A stretch of 64,000 nucleotides of DNA from Vitrella brassicaformis CCMP3155 (GCA_001179505.1 CDMY01000365.1:35803-99802), one strand, 5' to 3'; shown: positions 25,152 to 61,870, counted from the first letter of the stretch. Notes: generated from the sequence alone by a model not told the origin. Numbers and translations: made by a program.

Positions 25152-28100
25152 TCATGTAAAGCTAAAATCCAGCGAATGCACCCCGCTCCTCCTTCTCTCC
25201 CCCCTGTAGCCTGGTGGCATCCTGCTCTGCTTGGGTGACGATCCAGGGAGCGTCACCCCCGCCCGAATGCCGCCCGACCCCGGTGGCAGCTTGGCTCGAC
25301 ACAGCTCGGCCAGCTGCTGCAGCCGCCGTCTGTTGTCGGGGATGTCCTCGAAGTATCTGGCGGCGAACCGCTTCATTTGGTCCAGTTTGCCGGGGTCGGT
25401 CTCATCGATGGCCCACATCTCGATCTTGGGGTTGAATCGGAAGTACTTGTCCTCGGGCAGGAACTCGGACAGCATCTCGTGCGTGCCCTCCGTGTTGGTC
25501 GCCGAGCACACCAGCTGGTTGACGATGCCGTCCCATCCCACTCGCCCGCCGTAGCTCTGCTGTGGGAAGCGACCCGTGCCAACCGACACAATCGCCTCGA
25601 TCGGCGTATCGGGGAAAAGCGCCTTCGCCTCGGCGAGAGCAATGGCCGTCGGGTTGTTGGCCAGGAGCGCCCCATCGCCGTATGCCTCCCCGTCCAGACG
25701 CAGTGCGGGGAAGAATGTGGGCGCGGCAGTGGTGGCTCTGAGTGCGTCGCGGCACCGGATGCGGAAGGAGCCGGCGTATTTGCCTTGCCGGCCATTGGGG
25801 GGGTAGTTGTAGTTGCGCCAGAGGATGAGCGACGAGGGGTTGGCCGACACCATGGTGGAGAGGCAGAAGGTCTTGGGCACATCGGGGTCAGCGGCAGTGT
25901 CGATCATCCGAATGTCCCCGAGGGTGTTCTCGAGGATGAGCTCCCACGCCGTCTCGTCGTAGTAGGCCTGCTTGACCACCAGGCGCGCGCCCGAGATGGG
26001 GCCGGGGTCTTTGACGAATATATCTTTGATGAGGTTGTCATAGAGCACCTCCACCTCGTTGACGCTTGACTTTTGCACGCCCAGCAGCATGGCAATGATG
26101 CCGCCCGTCGAGGTGCCGCAAATGATGTCAAACACCTCGTGCACCTCCCGGCCCATGACGGCCACGATGAACTTGAGAATGGCGATCGTCAGGACGCCCC
26201 GGGTGCCTCCTCCGTCAAGGCACAGGATGCGCAGGCCCCTCTGCCCGGGCACCCGCGGGTGCCAATCGTTGTTGCATCCCATCGCCGCCAGCAGCTTGTT
26301 GGCCGTCCGGATCCTCTCCAGGTCTCGCTGCAGCGGCTTGTCGTCCTTGCCCTGCCACTTGGCCCACCTCGACTTGACCACCCCTGCCGACGGGTTCGTC
26401 CCCCCCGCCTGCACAAGGATCCGTCTGAGCAGCGGGGCCACGCGGGAGTCCGTCTGCAGCGCCCAGATAACCCTGTCGCTGCTCAGGGCCATCGTGCACA
26501 GGAGGTGCAGCGCCGCCCTCTGGGCCTGCAGTGCATGCGCACGGTGCCGCTCGTTGGCCAGGATAGACCGAGGCCCACGCCACTCGGGCTCCTCCAGCAC
26601 CTTGAGAATCGGCCCCAGCTCGCCCTTGCGCACAATGACGTCGGCCGTGGAGGGGTCCGTCTCGGTGATAAGGGTGAGCGTGCGGAGGGCCTTGGCTTGC
26701 AGCTGCGGCTTGCCTTTGCGTAGTGCCTTGAACAGGGCCCCCAGGCCGTACTCCCGTATGTGATCCATCTGGTCGGGCGCCACCACCTTGGCCACCAGCT
26801 CCACGCCAGGCGACGGCGGGGTCTGCTTGGGCGCGACGCTGTCCTCCCTCTTCTCCGCCGAGCTCTCCAATGCCGCCATCCAGATCTTCCGTGACGTCTC
26901 GGGATCGCTGTCGTTGGTCCTCCCCGCCGCCCTTGCCGCTGTACCCTCCTCGGTTTCTTCGTCAAGGGAGAGTATGGGTGCGGTGCCGCTGGCGTGGTTG
27001 TCGGAGATGAAGAGACTGAGGAGGCTCCACCCGCCGCCCTCCTGCGTGGTGTCGATCTCCAGGTCCTCCGGCACCTCAGGGATGGGGTGCACGCGGCCGT
27101 CGTGGGCGGCGGCGAGGCTCACCTCCAGCGCCTGCCGACCGCCTTTGGAGTAGTAAGGCACCCAGATGACGCCGCCCGGCGACTTGTCGCTCCTCCCGCG
27201 GTAAGACGACCCCAGCCGCCCCGACCGCGGCGCCACCACATTCTGCCACAGCCGCTTGGCAGACCGCTGGATGCCACGAGTCCCAATGAACTTGAACTTG
27301 GGTGCAGGGCGGCTGAGGAAGCCCCGCCAGCCCTTGGGACGCTCCTCCTTGGCTGCCTCTGGGTCGACCTTGGCGTAGCCCAGCTCCTCCAGGATCTGCC
27401 GGGCTACGTTGAGCTTCTTGCTCGGCAGCGGAGGGAGGGGTGGGGCGGTTGTGAGGGACAAAGGTGGAGAGGGGGTGGAGGGGTCGGGCACCTTCTTGCT
27501 CGCCGGCTTTGGGACAGTTGCTGGTGGGGGAGGGGGCGGGGCGAAGGCCAGGGGCCGGCGGGAGTCAGCGGCTGGTGTGGTGGTGGCATTGGCATGTGAC
27601 ACGTTGGCTGCCTGCTGTGGCGGCTCCTCTTTGCGCCCCCATGCGAAGATGAAGAACCCCCCAGTGGCGTTGTCTTGCCGCTGTGTCTCGTTCCGCCTCC
27701 TCTCCATCTCCTCTCTCTCCCTCTCCTGCTGGCCTATGATCTCCTTCAGCCGCTCGGCCTCCCTCTCGGCCAACACACCCTCCTCAGCCAACACGAACTT
27801 CTGCAGAATGTCGACCGCTCTCGCGTCGCCTCGCACGAGGCGCGCCGCCTTCTTGCTGGAGATGACCATCGTCAGCAGCAGCTCAAGGGCAGCACCCTGG
27901 GCCCGCTGCAGATAGTCGCGGTCCGATTCCCTGAACCACAGCCGCTGCCACAGTCGTCCCTGCATGGGCTGCTCCACCAGGCGTATAAGGTCGGCGGTGA
28001 TGTTGCGCGCCAGGATGACGTCGGTGGTGCTGGGCTCCACCTTGGCAATGGAGCAGAGCGACCTGGCTGCACGCGCCTGAAGGGCGGGGGAGCCGCTGAG

Positions 28101-31100
28101 TGCCTTGAAGAGCAGCGAGAGCCCCGACTCCTTGATGTAGGGCATCTCGGGCGATTTGAGGGCCAGCACGCCCCCGCTCTCCGTGGGCTCGCCCTCGCCC
28201 TCCTCCTCTTCCTCCTCGACGACAGCCTCATGCTCCCCCTCCCTCGGAGGGGAGGGCGTCTTGACCGGCATTTCCTTCTTTCTCTCCACCTTCTTGTCCA
28301 ACACCGGTGCGCCAGGCGGGGCGTGGTCGTCGCCAGTGAGCTCGCGCGCCCTCTGCCGAATGGCCTCGGTCACCGTGTCATTGGGCGTGACGGTGCGGTT
28401 TGTCCGCGTGACGTCGGCCTTGTCCTCCTCTATTGTCACAGTGGTCATGGCTGCGGCTGCCGTGGCCGTGAGGGGCCCCGTGGTGAGGTTGGTGTCGCTG
28501 CCGGGGAAGTGGTCGGGGTAAAGGGTTTCCATCTGCTCCACATTGACGCGCTCCTCCATCCTCTCCTCCCTTGTGCGCCGCGGCTCGCTCGCCGGTCGCC
28601 GCCTCCGGCCGAACCATGACGAGAGGAAGCCAACGGGCGATGGGCGTTGCCTGGGGGGACTGGGGGCAACTCGGTCGGCGAGGGATGAGAGGGAGAGGGT
28701 CGACTGGCTGGAGAGCTCGTCAGCGCCCGGTATTGAGAGGTCTTCAGGCTTGAGCTCCTGCACCGGCAGCTTCTTGCCCTTGGCCCTGTTCTTGCTCCCC
28801 TTGTCACCGGCAGCCCTCCTCTCGTCTTTGGCGGCTCCACTCGCCCCTGTCGCCCCTTGCCCACCGACAGCCGGTGCCTCGCGTGATGCGTTTGCGCTCT
28901 TGCCGACGAAGAATGGCACCCAGACGACGCCACCAGTGGAGCTCTTCTGCTCCTCCCGGAAGCCCACCACCTCCTCGTCTATGTCTGGGTCGGACTCGTT
29001 GCGTGGCGGGCGGCCGCTGGGGCCGCCGCCNNNNNNNNNNNNNNNNNNNNNNNNNNNNNNNNNNNNNNNNNNNNNNNNNNNNNNNNNNNNNNNNNNNNNN
29101 NNNNNNNNNNNNNNNNNNNNNNNNNNNNNNNNNNNNNNNNNNNNNNNNNNNNNNNNNNNNNNNNNNNNNNNNNNNNNNNNNNNNNNNNNNNNNNNNNNNN
29201 NNNNNNNNNNNNNNNNNNNNNNNNNNNNNNNNNNNNNNNNNNNNNNNNNNNNNNNNNNNNNNNNNNNNNNNNNNNNNNNNNNNNNNNNNNNNNNNNNNNN
29301 NNNNNNNNNNNNNNNNNNNNNNNNNNNNNNGGGCGGCCGCTGGGGCCGCCGCCACTAATCTCGGTGTGGGGGAAGGAGGGGAGCTGGGGGATGAGGGATA
29401 CGGCAGCATCCCAGAGCTGCTGCCACATGGACGGGGGAGGGGTGGGGGCGGGGCTGGGGGGACCGGGGAGCTCCTCGGAAGGAATCAGAGAACCTGACAA
29501 AGATGAGACAAACAAACAGAGCACACATGAGCTGGGTTGCCATGCTAGCCATCGGTCTGTTGTGTCAGATTGCCGTCTCACCTCGGTCTGTCGTCAGATC
29601 TTCAGGTTGCAGCGGTGGGGCGACCCGCTTCTGTGCCTTCGGTCGCTTCACCTGCCCTTCGTGCCTTCCCTTAGACGCCAACATGCCCTCCAGCACAGTC
29701 AGCGACCCCACCACCAGCTGAGAGGCCTTGACGCGACTCTCCAAAGTCTTCCCCACCTCCGACGGCACGGCCCTTTCCTCCTTCCGATCAAACAGACCCG
29801 ATGGCCTTGTGTGCTTCCGTCGTATGTGCAGGTGGGGGACGCTGCTATCGTGGTCAAGAGAGAGGCCTCGCTGATCTCCCGATGGCAGTTGGTCGGAAGC
29901 GGCCTTGATGACTGATGGCGGGACGCCGGCAGCCGAGAATTCGTCTGATGGGTCGACAGTGACCTTGGGAGGCTTCGGCTCTTCTTGAGCTGAGCCGCCG
30001 AAGTAGGGCAACGAGTTCCACAGAGAGGCAAGTTGGAAGAAGGGAGACCAATGCTCTTCCTCAGCTGCTGGAGGGTGCCTTGGCGGCTCGGTGGGCGAGG
30101 TGATCTCCTCGACCCAGGCGGTCTCTTCAGGACGGCTGACGGCAATTGCCGTGTCGACCTTGCCACTCGCTTGCCCAACCGGCTGCGCGGCCTCAGCTGC
30201 CTTGACCGACTCGACCATAAGCCAGGATGCCAGCAGGCGTGAGAGGAGCCGCTGGCCTCTCCCTCTGGCCTTCTTGATGGCCATCCGCATCACCGGCACC
30301 ACAGAACCCTCACTCCTCCGAAAGGAAAATAAAGACGCCACCCGGTTGAGCCGCCGCCTGAAGGGATGCTCCTTCCCCTGACTCGTGCCGGCTCGCCTCT
30401 GCTGCCGCCGCCTTGCCTCCTCCTGCTGTGGGGGTGGGGGCTGCTGCTGCTGCTGCTGTGGTCCTTCCTGCTGTTGCTGCTGCTGGTGGTTGTGTGCCCT
30501 GCCCCCCTGCTGCTGGTGGCTGGTGTTGTGTGTGTGGTTGTGTGGTTGTGGCTGGTGGCCAGCGGTGAAAAGCGTGCCCAGCCAGTCGATGAGGCTCACC
30601 TTCTGGGGACCTGGCTGCTCAGACGCCGGAAGAGCAGCGGCATCCTGCCGGGCGTTGAGAGCGATGGGGGTAGAGGGGTGGGAGGGAGGGACGGGGGACA
30701 CACCAGGGAGCGGTGAACCAGACGATAGTGTGCGATGATGCGAAGGGGAAAGGGGAACTCGATGACGAAGCTGCAAGCAACATCCACCGTCATAGATGCA
30801 ATCAATCATGCCATGCCATGCATCTCTGCCACTCGCTCTTTCTCTTGCCCATGTCCGTGCCTGTCTGTCCGTGTGTGCCTGTCTGTCTGCACGCACACCT
30901 GTTGCCGTCTCCAGGCCAGCCGCTGACCACTCGCCAGAAACGACGGCAGGCCCCTCGCACCCCTGTCACCGCTCAGCCACCCTCCCTGCCACACCCCCCG
31001 TCCCCCAAACACATACAAACACGCAGCACAGATGGGAAAGTCGCAGACCTGCATGTGTGCCGCGCTGCCAGACATGCAGGCAGACCGGGACAGTACAGTG

Positions 31101-50425: not shown

Positions 50426-53400
50426 NNNNNNNNNNNNNNNNNNNNNNNNNNNNNNNNNNNNNNNNNNNNNNNNNNNNNNNNNNNNNNNNNNNNNNNNNNN
50501 NNNNNNNNNNNNNNNNNNNNNNNNNNNNNNNNNNNNNNNNNNNNNNNNNNNNNNNNNNNNNNNNNNNNNNNNNNNNNNNNNNNNNNNNNNNNNNNNNNNN
50601 NNNNNNNNNNNNNNNNNNNNNNNNNNNNNNNNNNNNNNNNNNNNNNNNNNNNNNNNNNNNNNNNNNNNNNNNNNNNNNNNNNNNNNNNNNNNNNNNNNNN
50701 NNNNNNNNNNNNNNNNNNNNNNNNNCGACTGGATGATCAACAGCGGTGGCACCTTCTTCATTCGGGCACTTCCATGGGACACCCAGGGCAAAGCCGGGCC
50801 CACGGACACCGCACAGGACATCAAAAGTAACAAAACCTGAAGCCTCCATCAATGGCCATGCATGCATGCATGCATGCATCAGAGACGCTTTGATTTGGAA
50901 ATGCATCGACGACTGCCTTTGTCTGATATGTGTATCTTTTTTAGTATACATCGTTGCGCCGGGCGCTGCTCCGCCCCCGACGGTGAAGCATCATCGACCT
51001 GAGGTGATCCACACAGCTGAAGAAGTCGGCGGTGGCAGCAATTGATTAGCACTGCATGGAAAAGACTGTGGACCAAGGAATGAATTGCGACCCGCCGGCC
51101 AGTTTCCGTGATCTCGCAGAAGTGGACGGTGTTGAGGAAACGATGTGTCGGCCCGCAGATGGATAACCTCGGCTATAGCCTAATTGGTTTCTCAACAGAC
51201 GGAAGCGCGCTGAGCGCTGTGTCTCCCTCCCTCGCTTCCTCATTCTCCTTTTTCTTTTCTCAAAAGTACCTGGGCCGCCATCCTACCCAAATTGCACTCG
51301 TCTTCCTGCTTGTCATCTTTCTGCCTCGAACACCTACACGTCTGCCATTTAACGGCCCCCTCCTATTCAAGTGGGCGGGATTTTGCATAAGGCTTCTCTC
51401 GAGGCCTTTGTATTTGTAGCCTTCACATTCCGCAACATTCGCCGCATATACTCAACAAACAAAACAATACACCGAGTTTCTGTGCCTTCCCGTGGGCTCG
51501 TGGGCCACAGGTAGCTTTCTACGCCACCCTCTGGCGCCTCTCTCTTGTCCGAACCTCCGAAATGCGAACTCAAGCTGAAGATGACAAAAATAGTGCACGT
51601 CAGTCAGTTTACACGGGCAACGCAAGATTTGAACTAAACAAAAGCAGCGAAGAACGTCTTCTGGAACGGACGGCCTCATTCCATCAGTCATGGATAAGAA
51701 GCTTGCTCTCGTCCTTGCTGCATCCCTCGTAGTTGCTGCAAGGGGTGAGCACTCCTGTTGAAGACCAAGCCAATCATCAAGAATCGCCACTCGTGCGATT
51801 CACTCCTTTCGCCTTCTTGCTGTGTGTCTGCAGCCATCGACCCCCTCTCCCTCTTCCGTGTGAATGTCGCCCCGAATGCCCATGTCTGTATGTATCTGTT
51901 CCCCCTTCTTCTTGTCTTTCCTCCTCTTCCACCCAGCCTCCTGTCGTGATGTAGTCACGTCCATTCGACAGCTATCAGCCCTTGAGGCTTGCTTGCTCGA
52001 CTATCTGCCTGGTTTCCATGCATTTGTCTTGCTCCACGCCACCGTGCTTCCTCGCCCCGTACGCCATTGACAGACTGAAGACTGCCCTCTCTCTCTCTTG
52101 CTGTCCTAGCCATCCGTCCATTTATTCATGTGTGTGTGTTGTTCTTCCGTATCGTGCTGACTCAGTTGTGCCCTGCCCTGCTTCCGTTTCCTCTGTCGAT
52201 GTCTGATTGTCGTCGTGCTGATGTTTGATGCTGACAGACAGTCATGTGTGTGTCGGCTGGACCCGACGGACGAGATCATACTGACACAACGTGCTTCATT
52301 CCACCGTCCATCCATCCGTCCCGTAGCCAATACGCAACCATCAGTAAGAACCACCGCCCGTGAGGCGATGGGCCAGTCGAATAGACATACACACACCCCC
52401 AGCAGCCGTCCATGCGTATCTCTGTCTATCACCTGTACCCGCCATCACTGCACATACGCTCCTCTCTCCCTCTCTCCTCTCCCCTGCCTCTCTTGCTTCG
52501 TTCGACACCCTTTCCCTCTCTCTCTCTCCGTATGCTCTCGAATGATCCCGCTCCATCACAGCACCATACCCATCCGTTCACGAGTAGCTCTCAGCCTGAC
52601 ACCACACGCAATAAGCACTCCTAAGTCCCCTCCATATCCACACGTCCTGGCCGCCGCCCCTCGTCCCTCCTTAGCACCGCTTAGCAACGAATGACCACAC
52701 GATAGACACCCCGCAGTACAAACATCGTCCGTCACCTGAGACACAACCAATCAACGCGCACACCCCAAATACACCATGTCTGTGCTCCACCAGGCCCAGC
52801 CGGGCAAAAGAACATCCTCTTCACATCGTCCATGGCCCGCGCCATGCGGGCAGACACTCACACATATGGTACAACAACCGGCACATCTCTGCGAGGCGGG
52901 TCACTGCCGGAGGAGGCAGACCATGCCCACCTGACGCGGAGCGACACCAAGAAGGACGGTTTCTGAGATGCTGGCGGCACGCCGGTCCTGCTGCGTGGCC
53001 GTCACATCACCCAACACACGAAGCCGAGACACGGAGTCAAGCGATACATGACGGCAAGGCTGGCGGCGGCAAAGGCGGCAGAGAACTACACAACTAGCGT
53101 GAAGGGAAGGCTGTACACGTTGCCGGGGTAGACGTGAGCTCGTAGAAGTCGACTTGTTGAAGTAGGTGGCTGACGTGTCGTAAGTGTTGCAGAGCCTTCA
53201 AGTGAAGGAGGTTGTTTCGCCTCCGCAGGGCTTCACCGGACCTTGGCGCGGAGCTATATACACTTAGGCTTCCATAATTTTAAGCGAAATCGGCTCTAAG
53301 TGCGAAAAACGCGAAGTCCATTTTTGTGTATTTTTGTGGATCGAGTCTGGGGTTTTTCGACAAAGCGAAACCTTCGACAAAACGTCTCCTTTTGTTGTCC

Positions 53401-54060
53401 AGAGGGTTCTCGTCTGACATGAATCTCCTTTTGTTGTCTTTCGTTATGTCAACCCCGCGATCGAGGAGGATGGCGGCGAGCTTTGGCGGAGCTCGCGGCG
53501 AGTGATGGAGAGGGGAATCGGCATTGTGTCTCCCCCCCCCCCCNNNNNNNNNNNNNNNNNNNNNNNNNNNNNNNNNNNNNNNNNNNNNNNNNNNNNNNNN
53601 NNNNNNNNNNNNNNNNNNNNNNNNNNNNNNNNNNNNNNNNNNNNNNNNNNNNNNNNNNNNNNNNNNNNNNNNNNNNNNNNNNNNNNNNNNNNNNNNNNNN
53701 NNNNNNNNNNNNNNNNNNNNNNNNNNNNNNNNNNNNNNNNNNNNNNNNNNNNNNNNNNNNNNNNNNNNNNNNNNNNNNNNNNNNNNNNNNNNNNNNNNNN
53801 NNNNNNNNNNNNNNNNNNNNNNNNNNNNNNNNNNNNNNNNNNNCCCCCCCCCCCTCCCTGGTTCTGACTCACACATGAGTGTTTGTCTGATGGATGCAGA
53901 CGAAAGCTTAACGTGCCTCTTTTTCACTACGTGTCTCTGTTGCCAACCAGCATATCCCTTTACGTGCACATGATGCAGGCTTGTGTCTGCAGTGACTGGC
54001 TCGAGTTGCTGTCTTGTGTGCTTGTGTTTTGTATGTTCAAGTCTGGCGGAGCCTGGCAAG

Positions 54061-54555: not shown

Positions 54556-56178
54556 CCAGATCTGCAGCGCACGGTTGTGTGGGCTTCATCTTCACCTTAT
54601 GAATGGCAACGAATGCCGATGAGCTCTCTAATCGATATCCTGCGAACGCAATAAGATAAATCAATCAGTGCAAAGATGACCGTACGTGATTGCTCTATAC
54701 GTCTGTGGCCTACGCAGATGCAGACGCAAGTCGAACGTGCGTTGACGATGCGAAATCAATGAGAAACTGCGTTACTCTCTGGATGTCTTCCTGCGTATTT
54801 TGACGGGCGACTGAGCATACATCCACAAGTTTCTCGAGCCACAACTCGCCGCACAAGACAACAACGGTCACTGAAACAGCCTGAACCACACAAAAAGGTC
54901 TCATTCACTTCTGAGGCAAGACGCCCCCATAACACGCCCCCGCATCATGACAGCGGCTTTAAAGCTCCACCGGTACCATGCCTGCCGTCCTACCCAAATG
55001 CGTTCATCTTCCCATGCATCATCGTCTGCCTCGAATACCCACACGACTGCCCTATCACGCCCGCCCCCCCCCCCCCCCCNNNNNNNNNNNNNNNNNNNNN
55101 NNNNNNNNNNNNNNNNNNNNNNNNNNNNNNNNNNNNNNNNNNNNNNNNNNNNNNNNNNNNNNNNNNNNNNNNNNNNNNNNNNNNNNNNNNNNNNNNNNNN
55201 NNNNNNNNNNNNNNNNNNNNNNNNNNNNNNNNNNNNNNNNNNNNNNNNNNNNNNNNNNNNNNNNNNNNNNNNNNNNNNNNNNNNNNNNNNNNNNNNNNNN
55301 NNNNNNNNNNNNNNNNNNNNNNNNNNNNNNNNNNNNNNNNNNNNNNNNNNNNNNNNNNNNNNNNNNNNNNNNNNNNNNNCCCCCCCCCCCCCCCCATTCA
55401 AAGGGGGGGGGGATTTGCATCGCTCCTCTCGTCGAAGCCTTTGTAATTGCAGCCTTCCCATTCCCCAACACTCGCCACATGCACTCAGCAAACAGAACGA
55501 TAAACTTGGAACAAAGCAGTTTCTGTGCACCACACGTGAATTCTGCCGAAATCTCTGGCGTCTCCTCTTGTTCAGCCCTTCTGAAATACGTACTCAACCT
55601 CACGCAACCTCAAGGCGACCAAAAATCACTCTCGAAAAATATGTGTATCTTTGTTGCCCGGCATTTTCCTATGCTCTCCGTCTGGCCGATCGCCTCCCAT
55701 TACTCGGGGGCCCATCCCCTCTCATAGCAGTCCGTCGACACGCATTCGCGTGGGGTCCCATCTACTCATGTCTCACCTCCCACTGCTCTGTCGGATTCTG
55801 CAGCACTCCCCATGAAACTCCCTTCCTGCATGCACACACATCCATGCATCATACAAATTGCAACGCCCTCGCTTTTGTCTTCCATGCTCCTGCGACACAC
55901 GGCTCCAGGGTAAGGGAAGAGCTTTCCGCGTATTTCTTTGATTCATGGAATTCCCCCGCGACAGAGGCACCTTCGCATTCATTCCCATTTATTCCCTCTA
56001 GAAGCCCGCATAGCTCGCCACCGGATGCATGTGAGGCCTTGATAATGGGCAGAGCAGACGAGGAAGGAAAGCTGAATCGATTTGCTTTCACTTTTGACGT
56101 GAGCACATGTCCCCTCGACCTCACAGAGGTAAGACTCTTCTCTTTCCCCGTCAACGCACGTATAAAGGACAATTCGAT

Positions 56179-57325
56179 ATGAGACGAGTGTTGGCCCTGG
56201 TCGCGTTGGGCGGTGTAGCACAGCAAAGTGCATTCGGGGATGTCCGCAGCGACGCAGGCGCACCAGCAGGTGTCGCAGCCTGTGACTTAGGAAACGGTGA
56301 TTGTGAATTTAGCAGCGCTTGGTTCGACCTTCCGACCTCTCATTACAATAGCACTGACAGTACTTGTAGCTGCCCAGGCGCTGGTGGTAAGTGGATTGCA
56401 CTGTAACTAAGCTCATAGCTGACTGTCTCTGTCCTGGCTGTAGGCTCCTGTTATGGCGAGTGCGAGCGCAAGTTCGACGCTGCGGAAGTAGCCACCGTGG
56501 GGGCTTTCAAATATGGGCGGTTCGAGACCCGTCTCTTTCCGAATATCAGAGACAATGGCGGACTTGTGACTTTTTTCCTCTACAAGAACGACAGTGACAA
56601 AGTGCCGGGCACATCGTGGACGGAGATTGACTTCGAAGTGCACGGAATGGGAAAACACTGTCAGGAGCCGATCCAGACCAACGTAATTACAGGCACTATG
56701 GAAGACCGCAGCTTCTCAGAAGTGTTCTTCCCCGCACCTGGTCGCTAAAGGAACGTGGACGCACAGTTGAAAGGAGTTAAGAGAGGGTTCCATCACTTTG
56801 CCGTGGAGTGGACGTCCAGCTACGTTTCATGGTATTTTGATGGGCAGCGCCTACGCCACGAAGTCTCCTGCGATGCTCCAGGGGTCAACCGTGGCCATTG
56901 CAGCACTCAAGTGGCGCAAAGCAATGGGATGATGAATCTTAGGCTGTCCGTGTGGCCACTCAATCCGGCGCTTCCGTGGGCCGAGCATTGGGCCGGAATC
57001 TTCGATGGGAAGCACACCAAGCTCCCGCTCACCGTGTATTACGATTACGTCAAAGTGTATGACTATGATCCACTTTCCAAAGGTATGAATAGGAAAAACA
57101 AAGAACAGGAAATGCGGTTTGTGTTGGTTGCCTCCCTCAGGTTTCACTCTCAGATGGACTGACGACTTCAGGAGCTTCAAGACGTCGCGATGGGAGAGGA
57201 GCCAACATACATTTCTTGCCAATGAGCCTCATTTCCGGGATAATGCCGTCATCGCTGCAACAAATGCCACGGATGCGCGTGCTTATCTTGCTCTTTCTAT
57301 CGCCCGCGGTCCGGGGGTGTTGTAA
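56179..57325 (+). pseudogene. Secreted GH16 beta-1,3-1,4-glucanase-like enzyme, circularly permuted, with in-frame TAA at 56746-56748
   Basis: Exons 56179-56386, 56444-57082 and 57141-57325. Motifs FKYGRFETRL, FFLY...WTEIDFEVHG (ExDxE), FHHFAVEW...WYFDG, YVKVYDYDP, then C-terminal FTLRWTDDFRSFKTSRW. The frame is the same on both sides of the stop. Confidence 0.8.
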
Positions 57326-58267
57326 TAGGGCCCTGGGGCCCCGGACCAAATGTGATGTTATTAAATGACAATGGCGCACCTGATTCAAGGCCCGTTCGCA
57401 TGACTGGTGGAGCGGAAAGGTGAATAGATGAAGGATGGTTGTCGCGTTTTGCTCTTCCCTTCGGAATCGCACTCAAATAGGTTAAAGCGACTGTCGCGAC
57501 TCTCTCAATGCGTCGAGTCCATATGTACTTATATATGCGACAGGTGAATGCATTTTCATGCAAACGACAGCCCTAAGTCGGGCAAGACATTTTTCCGTGG
57601 ATCTGATTGATTATGTGAGCGTTAGGGGACCTGGTGAGAAATCTATCAGGGCTGTTCTGGATACTCTACCGTCGTCTTGCTTGTCAAGCGACATACAGCG
57701 ATCCTTTTCAGTCGATGACAAATTAAACAGAACATCCAGAGAGGGATCCCGACGTCTCTTTCCGCTCGCTTCCTCAGCGATGAAGGTGTCGACTGAGGGA
57801 GCATGGCCGGATGTACAGCGTCTTGACCCATTGGAGATTCTGTGCCACGAGACTGCATGCATCCATGCAACTTGGCCGGCCTTTGAACGGAGCATGGATG
57901 CGTCGGTTCAGCTCCACCAAAGGATAGAATATAGGATTATACTATGAATCCACAATAGGTGGTCCTCTGCACGAATGTCCACAGGATACCCACAATTTGA
58001 GACAGTGCATGAGAGTGGTAGGAGGAATGCACTGTCTGGATGACGCGGAGGAATTTTGTTTGTCATGATCTCCAAGAGGCCTCCAAGGAGTTCGAATCAA
58101 GACAACGGTGACTAGGGCTAGAAAACTCTCAAGACATGTTCAAATCACCAACACATTCTCCAGCACCGGCGGTGTGCCCACAGGAACCACAACACCACAT
58201 CTCCGTCAGCGTCTGCCTGTCACGCTGTGCCAGACGCTGCTATGGAGAGAACACCAGACCCGAGCGC

Positions 58268-59417: not shown

Positions 59418-61870
59418 ATGTGTATTGACAGGACCAACGGCGAAGGATGCTACAGCCTCCTATCGCTTTTCCTGTGCCTCTTGCCCTTTCTGGTCAAGTC
59501 CCAGATGCTCACTTCCACCACCACTCTCAACGTCACTGGCGAAATGGTCAGGTTCAGTCAACCAACAGCGCAGCTTATTGCCTGTTTCGTTACATGCTGC
59601 AGAAGCCATGGCACAAGCTGACGTTCACCTTCTCGGGCCCAGCGACAGACGAGGCAGCTACGCCCAGCCCCTTTTCATACTACCGCCTCACTATCAACCT
59701 CACCCACATTGGGGCAAGCGGCGATCGGACTTACACAGTACCTGGATATTTTGCCGCAGACGGTAATGCAGCCAACACCAGGGCCACAGGAGGCAACAAA
59801 TGGCGCTGCCATTTCACGCCTCCCCACGTCGGGCGGTGGCGCTATAGTGTGTCATTTCGCCGAGGAAAGAACATCATATTGGACCCGACGTTGCCGGGGA
59901 AATCTGCAGGCTACATGGACGGCTATGAGGGCGAATTTGCGGTGAAGCCGTCTGACAAGACGGGCAAGGATGGACGGGCCAAGGGATTGCTCCAATACGT
60001 GGGCAAGAGGTATCTCTGGTTGGCGGTAAGTGTGAACCTTAGTGGAAAGAGAGGAAGGGAGGAAGGGAGAAGACGCAATCACGTAAACAACCACGTGTAA
60101 CGTGTGCCTTGTCTACTTGTGCTGCTTTCAGGGAAGTGAGGAGTATTTTTTGAAGATAGGCACTGACTCGCCGGAGAACCTGCTTGCCTACGAGGATTTT
60201 GATAACACTCCAAACCATCTTGGTCTGGCTGTTTCAAGGGCACATCGGCTCGAGACAGTACAGGTAGACGTGATGTTGCATTTGTAGACTTGAGGAAGCA
60301 ATATAAAAGCCACACGAAAGATTGGAGAAAGGTAAGACAAGTCCACGTTGGTGCCAAGGCGGCTTGTCCAGTTGGGTTCTGGATGTGGTGGTTTCTTGTC
60401 CAGGGTGATCCCACATGGAACGGTGCGAAGGGAAAAGCTCTGATTGGCGCCATAAACTATTTAGCTTCCAAAGGTCTCAACATGATGTCTTTCCTCACAT
60501 TCAACGTGCAAGGTCAGTCTTCGCACACAAGTGCACACAGTGTCATTGTTGGCTCTCGAGTGATGGAGAAAAATGCAGGTGACGACGGCAATGTCTTCCC
60601 ATACACTAGCGAGTACTCCTTTCGCATCGACGTGAGCAAGACCGACCAGTGGGAGATCGCACTCGAGCACGCGGCGCAGAAGGGTATTGGATTGCACGTA
60701 AAGACGCAAGAGACAGAGAACGAATTCATCCACGGCAACAAGCACTTCATTGTGCGGAGGGCGATCTATTACCGGGAGTTAGTTGCTCGCTTCGGCCACC
60801 ATCCCCAACTCGTGTGGAATTTAGGTGAAGAGACGAAGATGCCGACGTCGCTACTGCTCGCAGCGGCTGACTATATCAGAAGTGTTGACCCGTACGACCA
60901 CCCGATAGATGTACACACGTACCCTAACGCAAAGGCAAAGGTCTACCCCGGGCTGATTCGGAGCGATACCAGTAAAGTGTAAGAAGGACGGAGCTGTGTG
61001 AGTGGTGCCGTCTGGATTTCCCCATCGGCTGCTCTGTGGCGCATTTCAGGACTGGGGCGTCCCTTCAGTGCGAGTTCCCCGAGCGAATCAACGCCGAGGT
61101 AGCAAAGTGGATTGCCAAATCAGCCAGAAGCCCAAACCCCCTTGTCGTGTCGAATGACGAGCAAGGGCCAAATTGGCTTGGTACTACAATTCGTTTCTTC
61201 CTCCCCGAATCCATCATGTTTTCTCTTTTCAGGCGTGGGAATCGATTCCCTCGACCCTGCTCATGACTCCTTCCGGCGCAATGCACTCTGGGGGACGTTG
61301 ATGGCTGGCGGGGCCGGCGTGGAGTTTTACTTTGGTTGGGGTTTTCGCCGGCACCAAACTGGCAACAAGGACCCGATAATAGGCAATGATGACACAGACA
61401 CCAGCCACCCGTACTCGACGTGCTCCGACCTCACATGCGAGGACTTTCGAAGCCGTGACAAACTGTTCACGCAGGCGTTTGTTGCCTGGCGCTTCATGAA
61501 GGACAACCACATTCCCTTCTGGGAGATGACCAGCAGTAATCACCTGACGGAGCAAAAAGACGACTTCGTATTCGCCAAAGAGGGCGACATCTACCTCGTC
61601 TACACGTTTGTAAACACAACAGAAGTAGAACTCAGTGTCCCCAGAGGGAACAACTATACGGTCCAGTATACGGTCCAGTTCTGGGACCCCAAGACAGGCG
61701 GCGACATGATTGACGGGCCGCTGGTCACAGCCGACTGCGGTGAGAGAGAAAAAAACTGCAAGGCGACGTTTTCACTCCAAGAGGCGCGGCGGCATATCGG
61801 ATCGTCTGATGTGCTAGTGGTGATCAGGAAAAAAAAGGCCGCCCTCATGTCTAAGATGCCCTTTACGTGA
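59418..61870 (+). CDS. DUF5060-type / apiosidase-like glycoside-hydrolase-fold protein of bacterial type, secreted, multi-exon; start approximate
   Basis: Spliced VTGEM|[25 protein letters not shown]...[62 protein letters not shown]...VWNLGEE, DPYDHP and [11 protein letters not shown]-like segments recalled from Bacteroidetes/Planctomycetes DUF5060 proteins. Confidence 0.75.

What the first reader, a model, noticed from the sequence alone, without database searches (positions are those of the whole stretch)
56179..57325. Circularly permuted, Fibrobacter-type GH16 glucanase with spliceosomal introns in a protist
Seen: the catalytic EIDFE lies early and the strand normally N-terminal in lichenases (WTDDFRSFKTSRW) is at the C-terminus. 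Knowledge (recalled): this is the domain order of the naturally permuted Fibrobacter succinogenes 1,3-1,4-beta-glucanase, with colinear matches (FLYKNDS..WTEIDFEV~FLYQNGS..WVEVDIEV; KLPL..YVKVYDYDP~KLPL..WVKVYKYTP; FTLRWTDDF~FTLDWTDNF). Inference: horizontal transfer from bacteria, followed by gain of a signal peptide, a Cys-rich leader and two introns.
Basis: partly seen in the sequence, partly recalled or inferred. Interest (0 to 1): 0.75.

Follow-up and report, generated by a model that had tools for sequence, protein, structure and literature searches.

The report
Permuted bacterial-type glucanase gene, Vitrella
The alga Vitrella brassicaformis carries a three-exon nuclear gene for a secreted beta-glucanase with the rare "circularly permuted" chain order of the Fibrobacter lichenase; it belongs to a family of about 20 Vitrella genes of probable bacterial origin, and this copy has one premature stop codon.

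Summary
Window 56179-57325 (+) holds a three-exon gene with two GT-AG introns of 57 and 58 nt. Its three coding pieces match the Fibrobacter succinogenes 1,3-1,4-beta-glucanase (PDB 1MVE) colinearly, at residues 5-85, 95-173 and 182-217. The catalytic EIDFE lies early and the usually N-terminal strand lies last.

The genome is Vitrella brassicaformis CCMP3155. The gene is not a one-off: about 20 paralogous loci lie on other contigs. Intron 2 sits at the same site and phase in all nine copies examined. Larger paralogues are fused to PAN/apple, C-type lectin and trefoil domains.

In searches of billions of proteins, every hit I could tie to a eukaryote was Vitrella. The nearest others are bacterial permuted GH16 at 29-39% identity. 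In trees the Vitrella sequences form one clade inside this bacterial group, and the donor is unresolved. This supports an old bacterial transfer followed by expansion.

This copy has an in-frame TAA at 56746-56748, where its closest paralogues have TCA or CGA. Its substitution pattern is still that of a constrained gene. It is therefore a very young pseudogene or a base error.

The scan has already reported this family twice on other DNA of this genome.

The parts
56179..56386 (+). Exon 1: start codon, predicted signal peptide (MRR + hydrophobic run) and the first part of a Cys-rich leader. It ends in phase 1.
   Evidence: Sequence and ORF list. Paralogue P0002/L003 matches exon 1 at 40% identity. 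The signal peptide is inferred from the sequence. The AF2 model of paralogue P0001 has an N-terminal helix at 2-17 followed by a low-confidence leader.
56387..56443 (+). Intron 1, 57 nt, GTAAGT..TGTAG, phase 1, at the site CPGAGG|SCYG.
   Evidence: A homologous intron lies at the same site in L003 and L006. It is absent in L002, L004 and L007-L009.
56444..57082 (+). Exon 2: end of the Cys-rich leader (SCYGEC) and the GH16 core of the jelly roll.
   Evidence: Pfam PF00722 on both halves. PDB matches to 1MVE 5-85 and 95-173. It is 75-79% identical to paralogues L002 and L003 without gaps.
56623..56637 (+). Catalytic motif E-I-D-F-E (EXDXE type, no beta-bulge), aligned with E56-D58-E60 of the Fibrobacter enzyme.
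   Evidence: Alignment. The motif classes are described in PMC6827312.
56746..56748 (+). In-frame TAA (codon 171 of the model). It is a premature stop or a base error.
   Evidence: Paralogue L002 has TCA and L003 has CGA at the same codon, in an otherwise colinear, conserved stretch. No plausible intron removes it.
57083..57140 (+). Intron 2, 58 nt, GTATGA..CAG, phase 1, exactly at the seam between the core and the transposed strand.
   Evidence: All nine paralogues examined have the same site and phase, with introns of 53-108 nt, all GT..AG.
57141..57325 (+). Exon 3: the strand segment that is N-terminal in ordinary lichenases (FTLRWTDDF...RW...HTF), the last jelly-roll strand, and the stop TAA.
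   Evidence: PDB match to 1MVE 182-217. The same segment of paralogue P0001 matches the N-terminal part of the non-permuted bacterial protein P0140.

Best explanation
This is a nuclear gene of Vitrella brassicaformis. It belongs to a lineage-specific family of about 20 loci that encode secreted, circularly permuted GH16 endo-beta-glucanases.

The family most likely descends from one old transfer of a permuted GH16 gene from a bacterium. That gene type is now found in Bacteroidota, Fibrobacterota, Cellvibrio, Sorangium, Spirochaetota and others. After the transfer the family gained a eukaryotic leader with conserved cysteines, spliceosomal introns, two Cys-flanked loop insertions and, in some paralogues, PAN/lectin/trefoil modules.

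The encoded enzyme would work as a retaining glycosidase. The first Glu of EIDFE would act as nucleophile, the last Glu as acid/base and the Asp as helper. It would cleave a beta-1,3-1,4- or beta-1,3-glucan outside the cell, plausibly in remodelling of the alga's own thick wall. That role is inferred, not shown.

The copy in this window has a single C-to-A type nonsense change (TAA against TCA in its close paralogue). The change would end the protein after 170 residues, in the middle of the fold. As assembled, the copy is therefore a very recently inactivated gene, unless the base is an error.
For: - Gene model and colinear PDB matches.
- Organism: the hits are Vitrella brassicaformis CCMP3155 proteins and the assembly has 72.7 Mb in 1064 contigs.
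- Family size: 20-22 matching places on about 20 contigs.
- Fold: the AF2 model of the closest intact paralogue P0001 (pLDDT 87) has the Fibrobacter permuted lichenase as its top matches, with target-normalised TM 0.90-0.92 and E about 1e-23. These rank ahead of engineered permuted and ordinary Bacillus lichenases.
- Distribution: a profile search of 1.84 billion representatives gave 8 hits below 1e-30, 7 of them Vitrella and one Chitinispirillales. In total 13 representative hits proved to be Vitrella, either named by a source or sharing a 90% cluster with a named Vitrella protein.
- Eukaryotic sources: of the best 120 of 524 profile hits, only Vitrella rows carry eukaryotic source tags.
- Bacterial relatives: 481 loci in the GTDB species genomes encode relatives (tblastn E <= 1e-3); the best 80 are 29-37% identical.
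- Trees: 11 Vitrella rows form a clade at SH-aLRT 98. All 12 form a clade at 94/87, inside a branch at 98/99. The Vitrella clade lies inside a 100/100 clade of permuted bacterial sequences when non-permuted outgroups are aligned over all homologous columns.
- Domestication: intron 2 is shared by all nine copies examined, there are PAN, C-type lectin and trefoil fusions, and P0001 is present in the MMETSP transcriptome set.
- State of this copy: TAA against TCA/CGA. dN/dS is 0.13-0.16 against intact paralogues. Window-specific changes are 15 synonymous to 10 non-synonymous, the same ratio as in the intact copies.
Against: - No enzyme assay exists for any member. Three substrate-contact positions differ from the Fibrobacter enzyme (E47D, N139S, W203H by 1MVE numbering), so the specificity is uncertain.
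- The sister of the Vitrella clade is weakly supported (a Cytophagaceae MAG, 90/81) and unresolved in the other trees.
- An AU test does not reject placing Vitrella with two non-permuted bacterial sequences (p 0.2).
- Chromera and colpodellid genomes could not be searched at the DNA level.
- Whether the TAA is real cannot be decided without reads.
- No protein of 150-478 aa in the collection corresponds to this copy, so there is no sign that it is annotated or expressed.
Confidence: 0.8

Rival explanations
1. The stop is an assembly or sequencing error, or a strain polymorphism. On this reading the locus is a fully functional member of the family.
For: There is only one defect, with no frameshift. 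All catalytic residues are kept. This copy has the shortest branch and the fewest private amino-acid changes of its trio. Its synonymous to non-synonymous ratio (15:10) equals that of the intact paralogues. The scaffold has several gaps nearby.
Against: A single-base substitution is an unusual error in a high-coverage short-read assembly (general knowledge, not tested). No annotated or transcript-derived protein of 150-478 aa for this copy was found, although five other paralogues were. Other family members also show stops or frame breaks.
Confidence: 0.35
2. The family is an ancient eukaryotic GH16 lineage that was inherited vertically and lost almost everywhere else.
For: The paralogues are deeply diverged (branches above 1 change per site). 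Intron 2 is old. The genes are fused to eukaryotic adhesive domains.
Against: No other eukaryote appeared among the named or source-tagged hits of the three protein-database searches. The clade sits inside a bacterial radiation that spans at least six phyla. The lichenase subfamily is described as bacterial, with only a few chytrid members (PMC6827312).
Confidence: 0.07
3. The permutation arose independently in the Vitrella lineage from a transferred gene of ordinary order, for example by tandem duplication and exon loss. Intron 2 would mark the seam.
For: Intron 2 lies exactly at the junction between the core and the transposed strand in every copy. The Vitrella core is as similar to the non-permuted P0140 (33%) as to permuted bacterial proteins. 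The transposed strand resembles that of P0140 and P0131 (H-T-F..N-E..F). The AU test does not reject Vitrella plus these two as one clade (p 0.2).
Against: The ML trees place Vitrella inside the permuted bacterial clade, behind branches at 98/99 and 100/100. The constrained tree is 28 log-likelihood units worse. The same order, and the same H in place of W203, occur in bacterial permuted proteins such as P0014. Two origins of a rare rearrangement are less parsimonious than one.
Confidence: 0.06
4. The segment is bacterial contamination of the assembly.
For: The best non-self matches are bacterial.
Against: The gene has two GT-AG introns that are shared with paralogues on about 20 contigs. Identity to any bacterium is only 29-39%. 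One paralogue is present in the transcriptome set.
Confidence: 0.01

Closest known systems
Fibrobacter succinogenes 1,3-1,4-beta-D-glucanase (PDB 1MVE, 1ZM1, 3AXD), the natural circularly permuted jelly-roll lichenase
   Same: The chain order is the same: core first, then the strand that is N-terminal in Bacillus enzymes. The match is colinear over residues 5-217. The EXDXE catalytic motif is shared. The positions E11, F40, Y42, N44, W54, R137, W141, W148, T204 and F205 are conserved. The model of the paralogue superposes at TM 0.9.
   Different: Identity is only about 30%. The gene is eukaryotic, nuclear and intron-bearing. It has a Cys-rich leader and three loop insertions, one of them flanked by two conserved cysteines. 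E47D, N139S and W203H differ. It lacks the C-terminal repeat region of the bacterial enzyme. Fibrobacterota are not its specific sister.
Vitrella brassicaformis 'GH16 domain-containing proteins'
   Same: They are the same family. P0001 and P0002 are 75-79% identical to the window gene over exon 2. Intron 2 is shared. The leader motif C-x-C-P-G-x-G-G-S-C-Y-G-x-C is shared.
   Different: Those copies are intact and annotated, and one is in the MMETSP set. The window copy has a premature TAA, and I found no annotated protein for it. It lacks the PAN, lectin and trefoil extensions of the larger members.
GH16_21 licheninases of anaerobic chytrid fungi (a bacterial-type lichenase in a eukaryote)
   Same: They are a precedent for a bacterial-type mixed-linkage glucanase of the EXDXE class in a eukaryote (PMC6827312).
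   Different: As far as I recall (not tested here), those have the ordinary, non-permuted order and occur in gut fungi. The Vitrella genes are permuted, occur in a free-living or coral-associated phototroph, and have expanded to about 20 copies.
Bacterial-type expansin (EXLX) of Vitrella brassicaformis
   Same: It is another wall-modifying protein reported in Vitrella alone among alveolates, and it was inferred to be a bacterium-to-eukaryote transfer (bioRxiv 10.1101/637728).
   Different: It is an unrelated fold and a non-enzymatic protein, relevant only as context.

Membership tests
Glycoside hydrolase family 16 (Pfam PF00722) | Sequence match to the family model above the curated cut-off | tested here: met
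   The two halves of exon 2 score 27.9 and 26.8 bits against a cut-off of 22. Paralogue P0001 scores 70 bits.
Glycoside hydrolase family 16 (Pfam PF00722) | Beta-jelly-roll fold | tested here: met
The AF2 model has pLDDT 87 and TM 0.90-0.92 to 1MVE and 3AXD.
Lichenase-type GH16 (EXDXE class, GH16_21-like) | Catalytic strand E-x-D-x-E without the beta-bulge | tested here: met
   EIDFE at 56623-56637 aligns with E56-V-D58-I-E60. The class definition is in PMC6827312.
Lichenase-type GH16 (EXDXE class, GH16_21-like) | Strict hydrolysis of beta-1,4 bonds next to beta-1,3 in mixed-linkage glucan | not testable with these tools
   Most contact residues are conserved, but E47D, N139S and W203H differ. 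Formal CAZy subfamily assignment was not run.
Naturally permuted GH16 (Fibrobacter type) | The segment homologous to the N-terminal strand of ordinary lichenases lies C-terminal to the catalytic core | tested here: met
   Exon 3 matches 1MVE 182-217, after exon 2 matches 5-173. P0001 residues 276-313 match P0140 121-158, while its core 70-271 matches P0140 175-338.
Naturally permuted GH16 (Fibrobacter type) | Phylogenetic position inside the permuted clade | tested here: inconclusive
   The ML trees place it inside, behind branches at 98/99 and 100/100. The AU test does not reject the alternative with two non-permuted sequences (p 0.2).
Functional gene of the Vitrella GH16 family | Uninterrupted reading frame across the spliced exons | tested here: not met
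   There is an in-frame TAA at 56746-56748 where paralogues have TCA or CGA.

The most novel reading that the evidence does not exclude
Vitrella took up a permuted bacterial glucanase long ago and built from it a family of about 20 secreted enzymes, some joined to PAN/apple, C-type lectin and trefoil modules. These would remodel a beta-1,3-1,4- or beta-1,3-glucan layer of its own laminated wall, for example at sporangium opening. That would point to a mixed-linkage-type glucan in an alveolate wall, and to an adhesive-domain/glycosidase architecture that echoes apicomplexan surface proteins. A less likely variant is that the permutation itself was made anew in the eukaryote, with intron 2 marking the seam.
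Probability: 0.2. Interest if true: 0.55.

Novelty: new member of a known kind. Interest (0 to 1): 0.35.

Why it matters
The finding adds a clear case of a bacterial carbohydrate-active enzyme that was taken up and domesticated by a photosynthetic relative of apicomplexan parasites. Domestication here means introns, a eukaryotic leader, gene-family expansion and fusion to PAN/lectin modules.

It also shows that the "Fibrobacter-type" permuted GH16 is not a curiosity of one rumen bacterium. It is a widespread bacterial clade with an offshoot in a eukaryote.

It gives a testable lead on the chemistry and turnover of the chromerid wall. I found no paper that mentions GH16 in Vitrella. However, the proteins are already annotated as GH16 in public databases, and this scan has reported the family twice. 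The particular copy here adds little beyond a young nonsense allele.

Tried and rejected
- **Stop-codon reassignment or a hidden intron at the TAA.** This was rejected. Paralogues read a sense codon (TCA or CGA) there, within a colinear and conserved peptide. The only frame-keeping GT..AG candidate, a 42-nt stretch at 56725-56766, would be shorter than any intron seen in the family (53-108 nt) and would delete conserved residues.
- **First locus scan with alignment A1.** It failed because the fragment rows left no conserved stretch. I repeated it with A3.
- **Careful C20 tree of 110 rows.** It did not finish in 719 s. A 55-row C20 run was killed by the sandbox. The careful trees reported therefore use LG+G4, and only the quick tree uses the mixture model.
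- **GC3 comparison.** The window copy has GC3 of 0.64 and the paralogues range from 0.63 to 0.92, against 0.74-0.84 for three unverified long ORFs (one with a patatin domain). This says nothing clear about the age of the transfer.
- **Third large protein search.** A search for transcript-derived fragments of this copy was not run. One search had already covered the length range in which such fragments would fall.
- **Neighbouring ORF 60290-60982.** A PDB sequence search found nothing.
- **Joined models.** No spliced or stop-bridged protein of the window gene was handed to any tool. Exons and the two halves of exon 2 were searched apart by reference. In the trees the window row is the plain translation of contiguous exon 2, with the stop counted as a gap. 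Full-length analyses used the intact paralogue P0001 as a stand-in.

Full report
**What is in the sequence**

Reading 55600-57900 and listing ORFs gives a clean three-exon model on the + strand:
- Exon 1 runs from the ATG at 56179 to 56386.
- Intron 1 is 56387-56443 (57 nt, GTAAGT..TGTAG, phase 1).
- Exon 2 is 56444-57082.
- Intron 2 is 57083-57140 (58 nt, GTATGA..CAG, phase 1).
- Exon 3 is 57141-57325, ending in TAA followed directly by TAG.

Exon 2 contains one in-frame TAA at 56746-56748. The pieces 56179-56385, 56446-56745, 56749-57081 and 57143-57322 were searched apart by reference.

Pfam GH16 passes its cut-off on both halves of exon 2. Against all PDB sequences, each of the three pieces has the Fibrobacter succinogenes 1,3-1,4-beta-glucanase chains as its best hits, and the hits are colinear:
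- The first half of exon 2 matches 1MVE residues 5-85 (best E 3e-9).
- The second half matches residues 95-173 (E 1e-8).
- Exon 3 matches residues 182-217 (E 7e-4).

Ordinary Bacillus lichenases match the first piece much later in their chains (positions 54-115). Engineered permuted variants match it at their start.

The 1MVE sequence index agrees with the mutant names in the PDB titles (V18Y, F40I, E85I, W203Y). Using it, the window gene keeps E11, F40, Y42, N44, W54, E56, D58, E60, R137, W141, W148, W186, W198, T204 and F205. It differs at E47D, N139S and W203H.

**Organism and family**

The window's assembly has 72.7 Mb in 1064 contigs. The nearest proteins are from Vitrella brassicaformis CCMP3155.

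Searching the genome with the two halves of exon 2 gives 20 and 22 matching places on about 20 contigs. The closest copies are L002 (protein P0001, 349 aa) and L003 (P0002, 388 aa). They are 75-79% identical to the window over exon 2, without a single gap.

At the position of the window's TAA, L002 has TCA (Ser) and L003 has CGA (Arg). The peptide on both sides is conserved. The TAA is therefore a one-base nonsense change in coding sequence. It is neither an intron nor a reassigned codon.

**State of this copy**

dN/dS against the intact paralogues is 0.13 and 0.16, at dS of about 1. The two intact paralogues compared with each other give 0.125.

I also counted the changes private to each member of the trio:

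| Copy | Synonymous codon changes | Non-synonymous codon changes | Private amino-acid changes |
|---|---|---|---|
| Window | 15 | 10 | 14 |
| L003 | 25 | 16 | 25 |
| L002 | 27 | 18 | 20 |

The window copy has the same ratio as the intact copies and the fewest private amino-acid changes. There is no trace of relaxed constraint. The stop is either very young or not real.

As assembled, translation would end after 170 residues. The product would have the catalytic strand but only half of the jelly roll.

The 273-aa query covered candidates of 150-478 aa and recovered five other paralogues. It found no protein for this copy, so I have no sign that the copy is annotated or represented in transcript-derived sets.

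**Introns**

Intron 2 sits at the same codon and phase in all nine copies examined (..Y-D-Y-D-P-x-x-K | G-F-x-L..). Its length is 53-108 nt, always GT..AG. It therefore predates the expansion of at least this part of the family. It also lies exactly at the seam between the core and the transposed strand.

Intron 1 (C-P-G-A-G-G | S-C-Y-G) is present in the window, L003 and L006, with a recognisably homologous 3' half. It is absent in L002, L004 and L007-L009. Some paralogues have further private introns or frame breaks.

**Fold**

The AF2 model of the intact paralogue P0001, built on a 71-row alignment, has mean pLDDT 87 and pTM 0.81. The core is above 95 and the leader (residues 21-53) is disordered.

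Foldseek against the PDB ranks the nine Fibrobacter permuted lichenase chains first (E about 1e-23, target-normalised TM 0.89-0.92, rmsd 2.0-2.6 A). Next come the engineered permuted Bacillus enzymes 1CPN and 1CPM. The ordinary lichenases follow, with only about 200 aligned columns.

A direct BLASTP of P0001 against the non-permuted bacterial protein P0140 shows the permutation plainly. The core 70-271 matches P0140 175-338 (33% identity). The C-terminal 276-313 matches P0140 121-158 (42% identity).

**Relatives and origin**

I ran four searches:
- The word-based search with the L002 exon found only Vitrella proteins plus four non-Vitrella proteins, two of them named as bacterial (Chitinivibrionales 34%, Planctomycetota 39%).
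- An HMM profile of five Vitrella copies against 1.84 billion representatives gave 715 hits. Only 8 were below 1e-30. Seven of those are Vitrella and one is from Chitinispirillales / Cellulosispirillum, in Fibrobacterota.
- A second profile search that reports sources listed 120 of 524 hits. Only the Vitrella rows carry eukprot or mmetsp sources. Every other named row is Fibrobacter, Chitinispirillaceae, Sorangium or Planctomycetota.
- The GTDB species genomes hold 481 loci that encode relatives; the best 80 are 29-37% identical. They come from Bacteroidales, Paludibacteraceae, Cytophagales, Cellvibrionaceae, Sorangium, Fibrobacterota, Spirochaetota, Melioribacteraceae and others.

Name look-ups of 30 representatives showed that the divergent hits P0021, P0024, P0086 and P0108 are also Vitrella, while P0084 and P0114 are Bacteroidota MAGs. 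Nearly all of the best hits cover the C-terminal strand as well, so they share the permuted order.

**Trees**

- The quick mixture-model tree of 110 rows joins 11 Vitrella rows at SH-aLRT 98. The long-branched P0024 lies elsewhere.
- A careful LG+G4 tree of 55 rows joins all 12 Vitrella rows (94/87) inside a branch at 98/99 that holds most permuted bacterial sequences. A Cytophagaceae MAG is a weak sister (90/81). The window copy is sister to P0002 (99/75).
- For a third tree I re-ordered three non-permuted outgroups, for alignment only, so that all homologous columns were compared. The main Vitrella clade (11 rows, 86/89) again lies inside a 100/100 clade of permuted bacterial sequences, several supported branches away from the non-permuted P0131 and P0140.

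AU tests gave these results:

| Constraint tested as one clade | p-AU | Outcome |
|---|---|---|
| All 12 Vitrella rows | 0.41 | Not rejected |
| Vitrella plus the five Fibrobacterota rows | 0.0008 | Rejected |
| Vitrella plus the two non-permuted sequences | 0.2 (28 lnL units worse) | Not rejected |

The second test also forces the scattered Fibrobacterota rows together, so it shows only that there is no exclusive Vitrella-Fibrobacterota grouping.

My reading is one old transfer from an unidentified bacterium that already had the permuted order, followed by expansion in the Vitrella lineage. An independent permutation is unlikely but is not formally excluded.

**Signs of domestication**

Compared with bacterial relatives, the Vitrella proteins have:
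- a leader with the conserved pattern C-x-C-P-G-x-G-G-S-C-Y-G-x-C;
- a 10-residue loop insertion, which is where the TAA lies;
- a 12-residue insertion flanked by two invariant cysteines;
- a short third insertion.

Larger paralogues carry PAN/apple, C-type lectin and trefoil domains. P0001 is present in the MMETSP transcriptome set. The bacterial relatives have their own signal or lipoprotein leaders, so the eukaryotic leader replaced a bacterial one.

Contamination is excluded by the introns, by the spread over about 20 contigs and by the gene's place on a contig of at least 99.8 kb.

**Function**

The chemistry is inferred from the family: a retaining endo-beta-glucanase, with the two glutamates of EIDFE as nucleophile and acid/base. 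The substrate is open.

The lichenase subfamily is strict for mixed-linkage glucan (PMC6827312). The N139S and W203H changes lie at positions that the Fibrobacter structural work targeted, as the PDB titles show.

A role in remodelling the alga's own wall is my guess, not a result. I base it on the secretion leader, the copy number and the adhesive-domain fusions. As context, Vitrella is also the only alveolate reported with a bacterial-type expansin (bioRxiv 10.1101/637728).

**Novelty and score**

The family is annotated as "GH16 domain-containing protein" in public databases. I found no paper on it. This scan has already reported two other members on other DNA of this genome, with the same reading.

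The window copy is a further member, and a broken one as assembled. I rate it a new member of a known kind, of moderate interest.

Noticed in passing
window 59447-61870 (+): Three ORF blocks look like exons of one gene, 2 kb downstream of the GH16. The first has Pfam DUF5060 (E 2.3e-14), which as far as I recall (not tested here) usually sits in front of bacterial glycosidase-like domains. The second holds an N-L-G-E-E stretch reminiscent of GH5-type enzymes. This may be a second bacterial-type carbohydrate enzyme next door. A PDB sequence search of the second block found nothing.
   Followed up: partly
window 57083-57140 and the same site in L002-L009: Intron 2 of the family lies exactly at the seam of the circular permutation, between the last core strand and the transposed strand. 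It has the same site and phase in all nine copies examined.
   Followed up: partly
proteins P0090 and P0034 (unnamed metagenomic proteins): They carry two and three tandem GH16 cores in one chain. This is the arrangement expected as an intermediate in the duplication model of circular permutation.
   Followed up: no
Vitrella proteins P0012, P0024, P0086, P0108 (other contigs of G000): Large paralogues join the permuted GH16 to PAN/apple repeats, C-type lectin and trefoil domains. P0003 and P0004 have a Cys-rich C-terminal extension of similar look.
   Followed up: partly
window 29031-29330, 50426-50725, 53544-53843, 55080-55379: There are four assembly gaps of exactly 300 N. The last is flanked by C-rich runs and lies 800 bp upstream of the GH16 start codon. 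GC drops from about 0.6 to 0.46-0.52 across 50-58 kb.
   Followed up: no
window 25152-28970 (-): A long open frame of 1272 aa has a patatin-like phospholipase domain (E 7.6e-30).
   Followed up: no
window 56179-56240: The predicted signal peptide ends ..A-Q-Q-S-A | F-G-D. Cleavage there would leave Phe at +1, as in the plastid-targeting motif of algae with complex plastids. The paralogues P0001 and P0002 lack the Phe, so this is probably chance.
   Followed up: no
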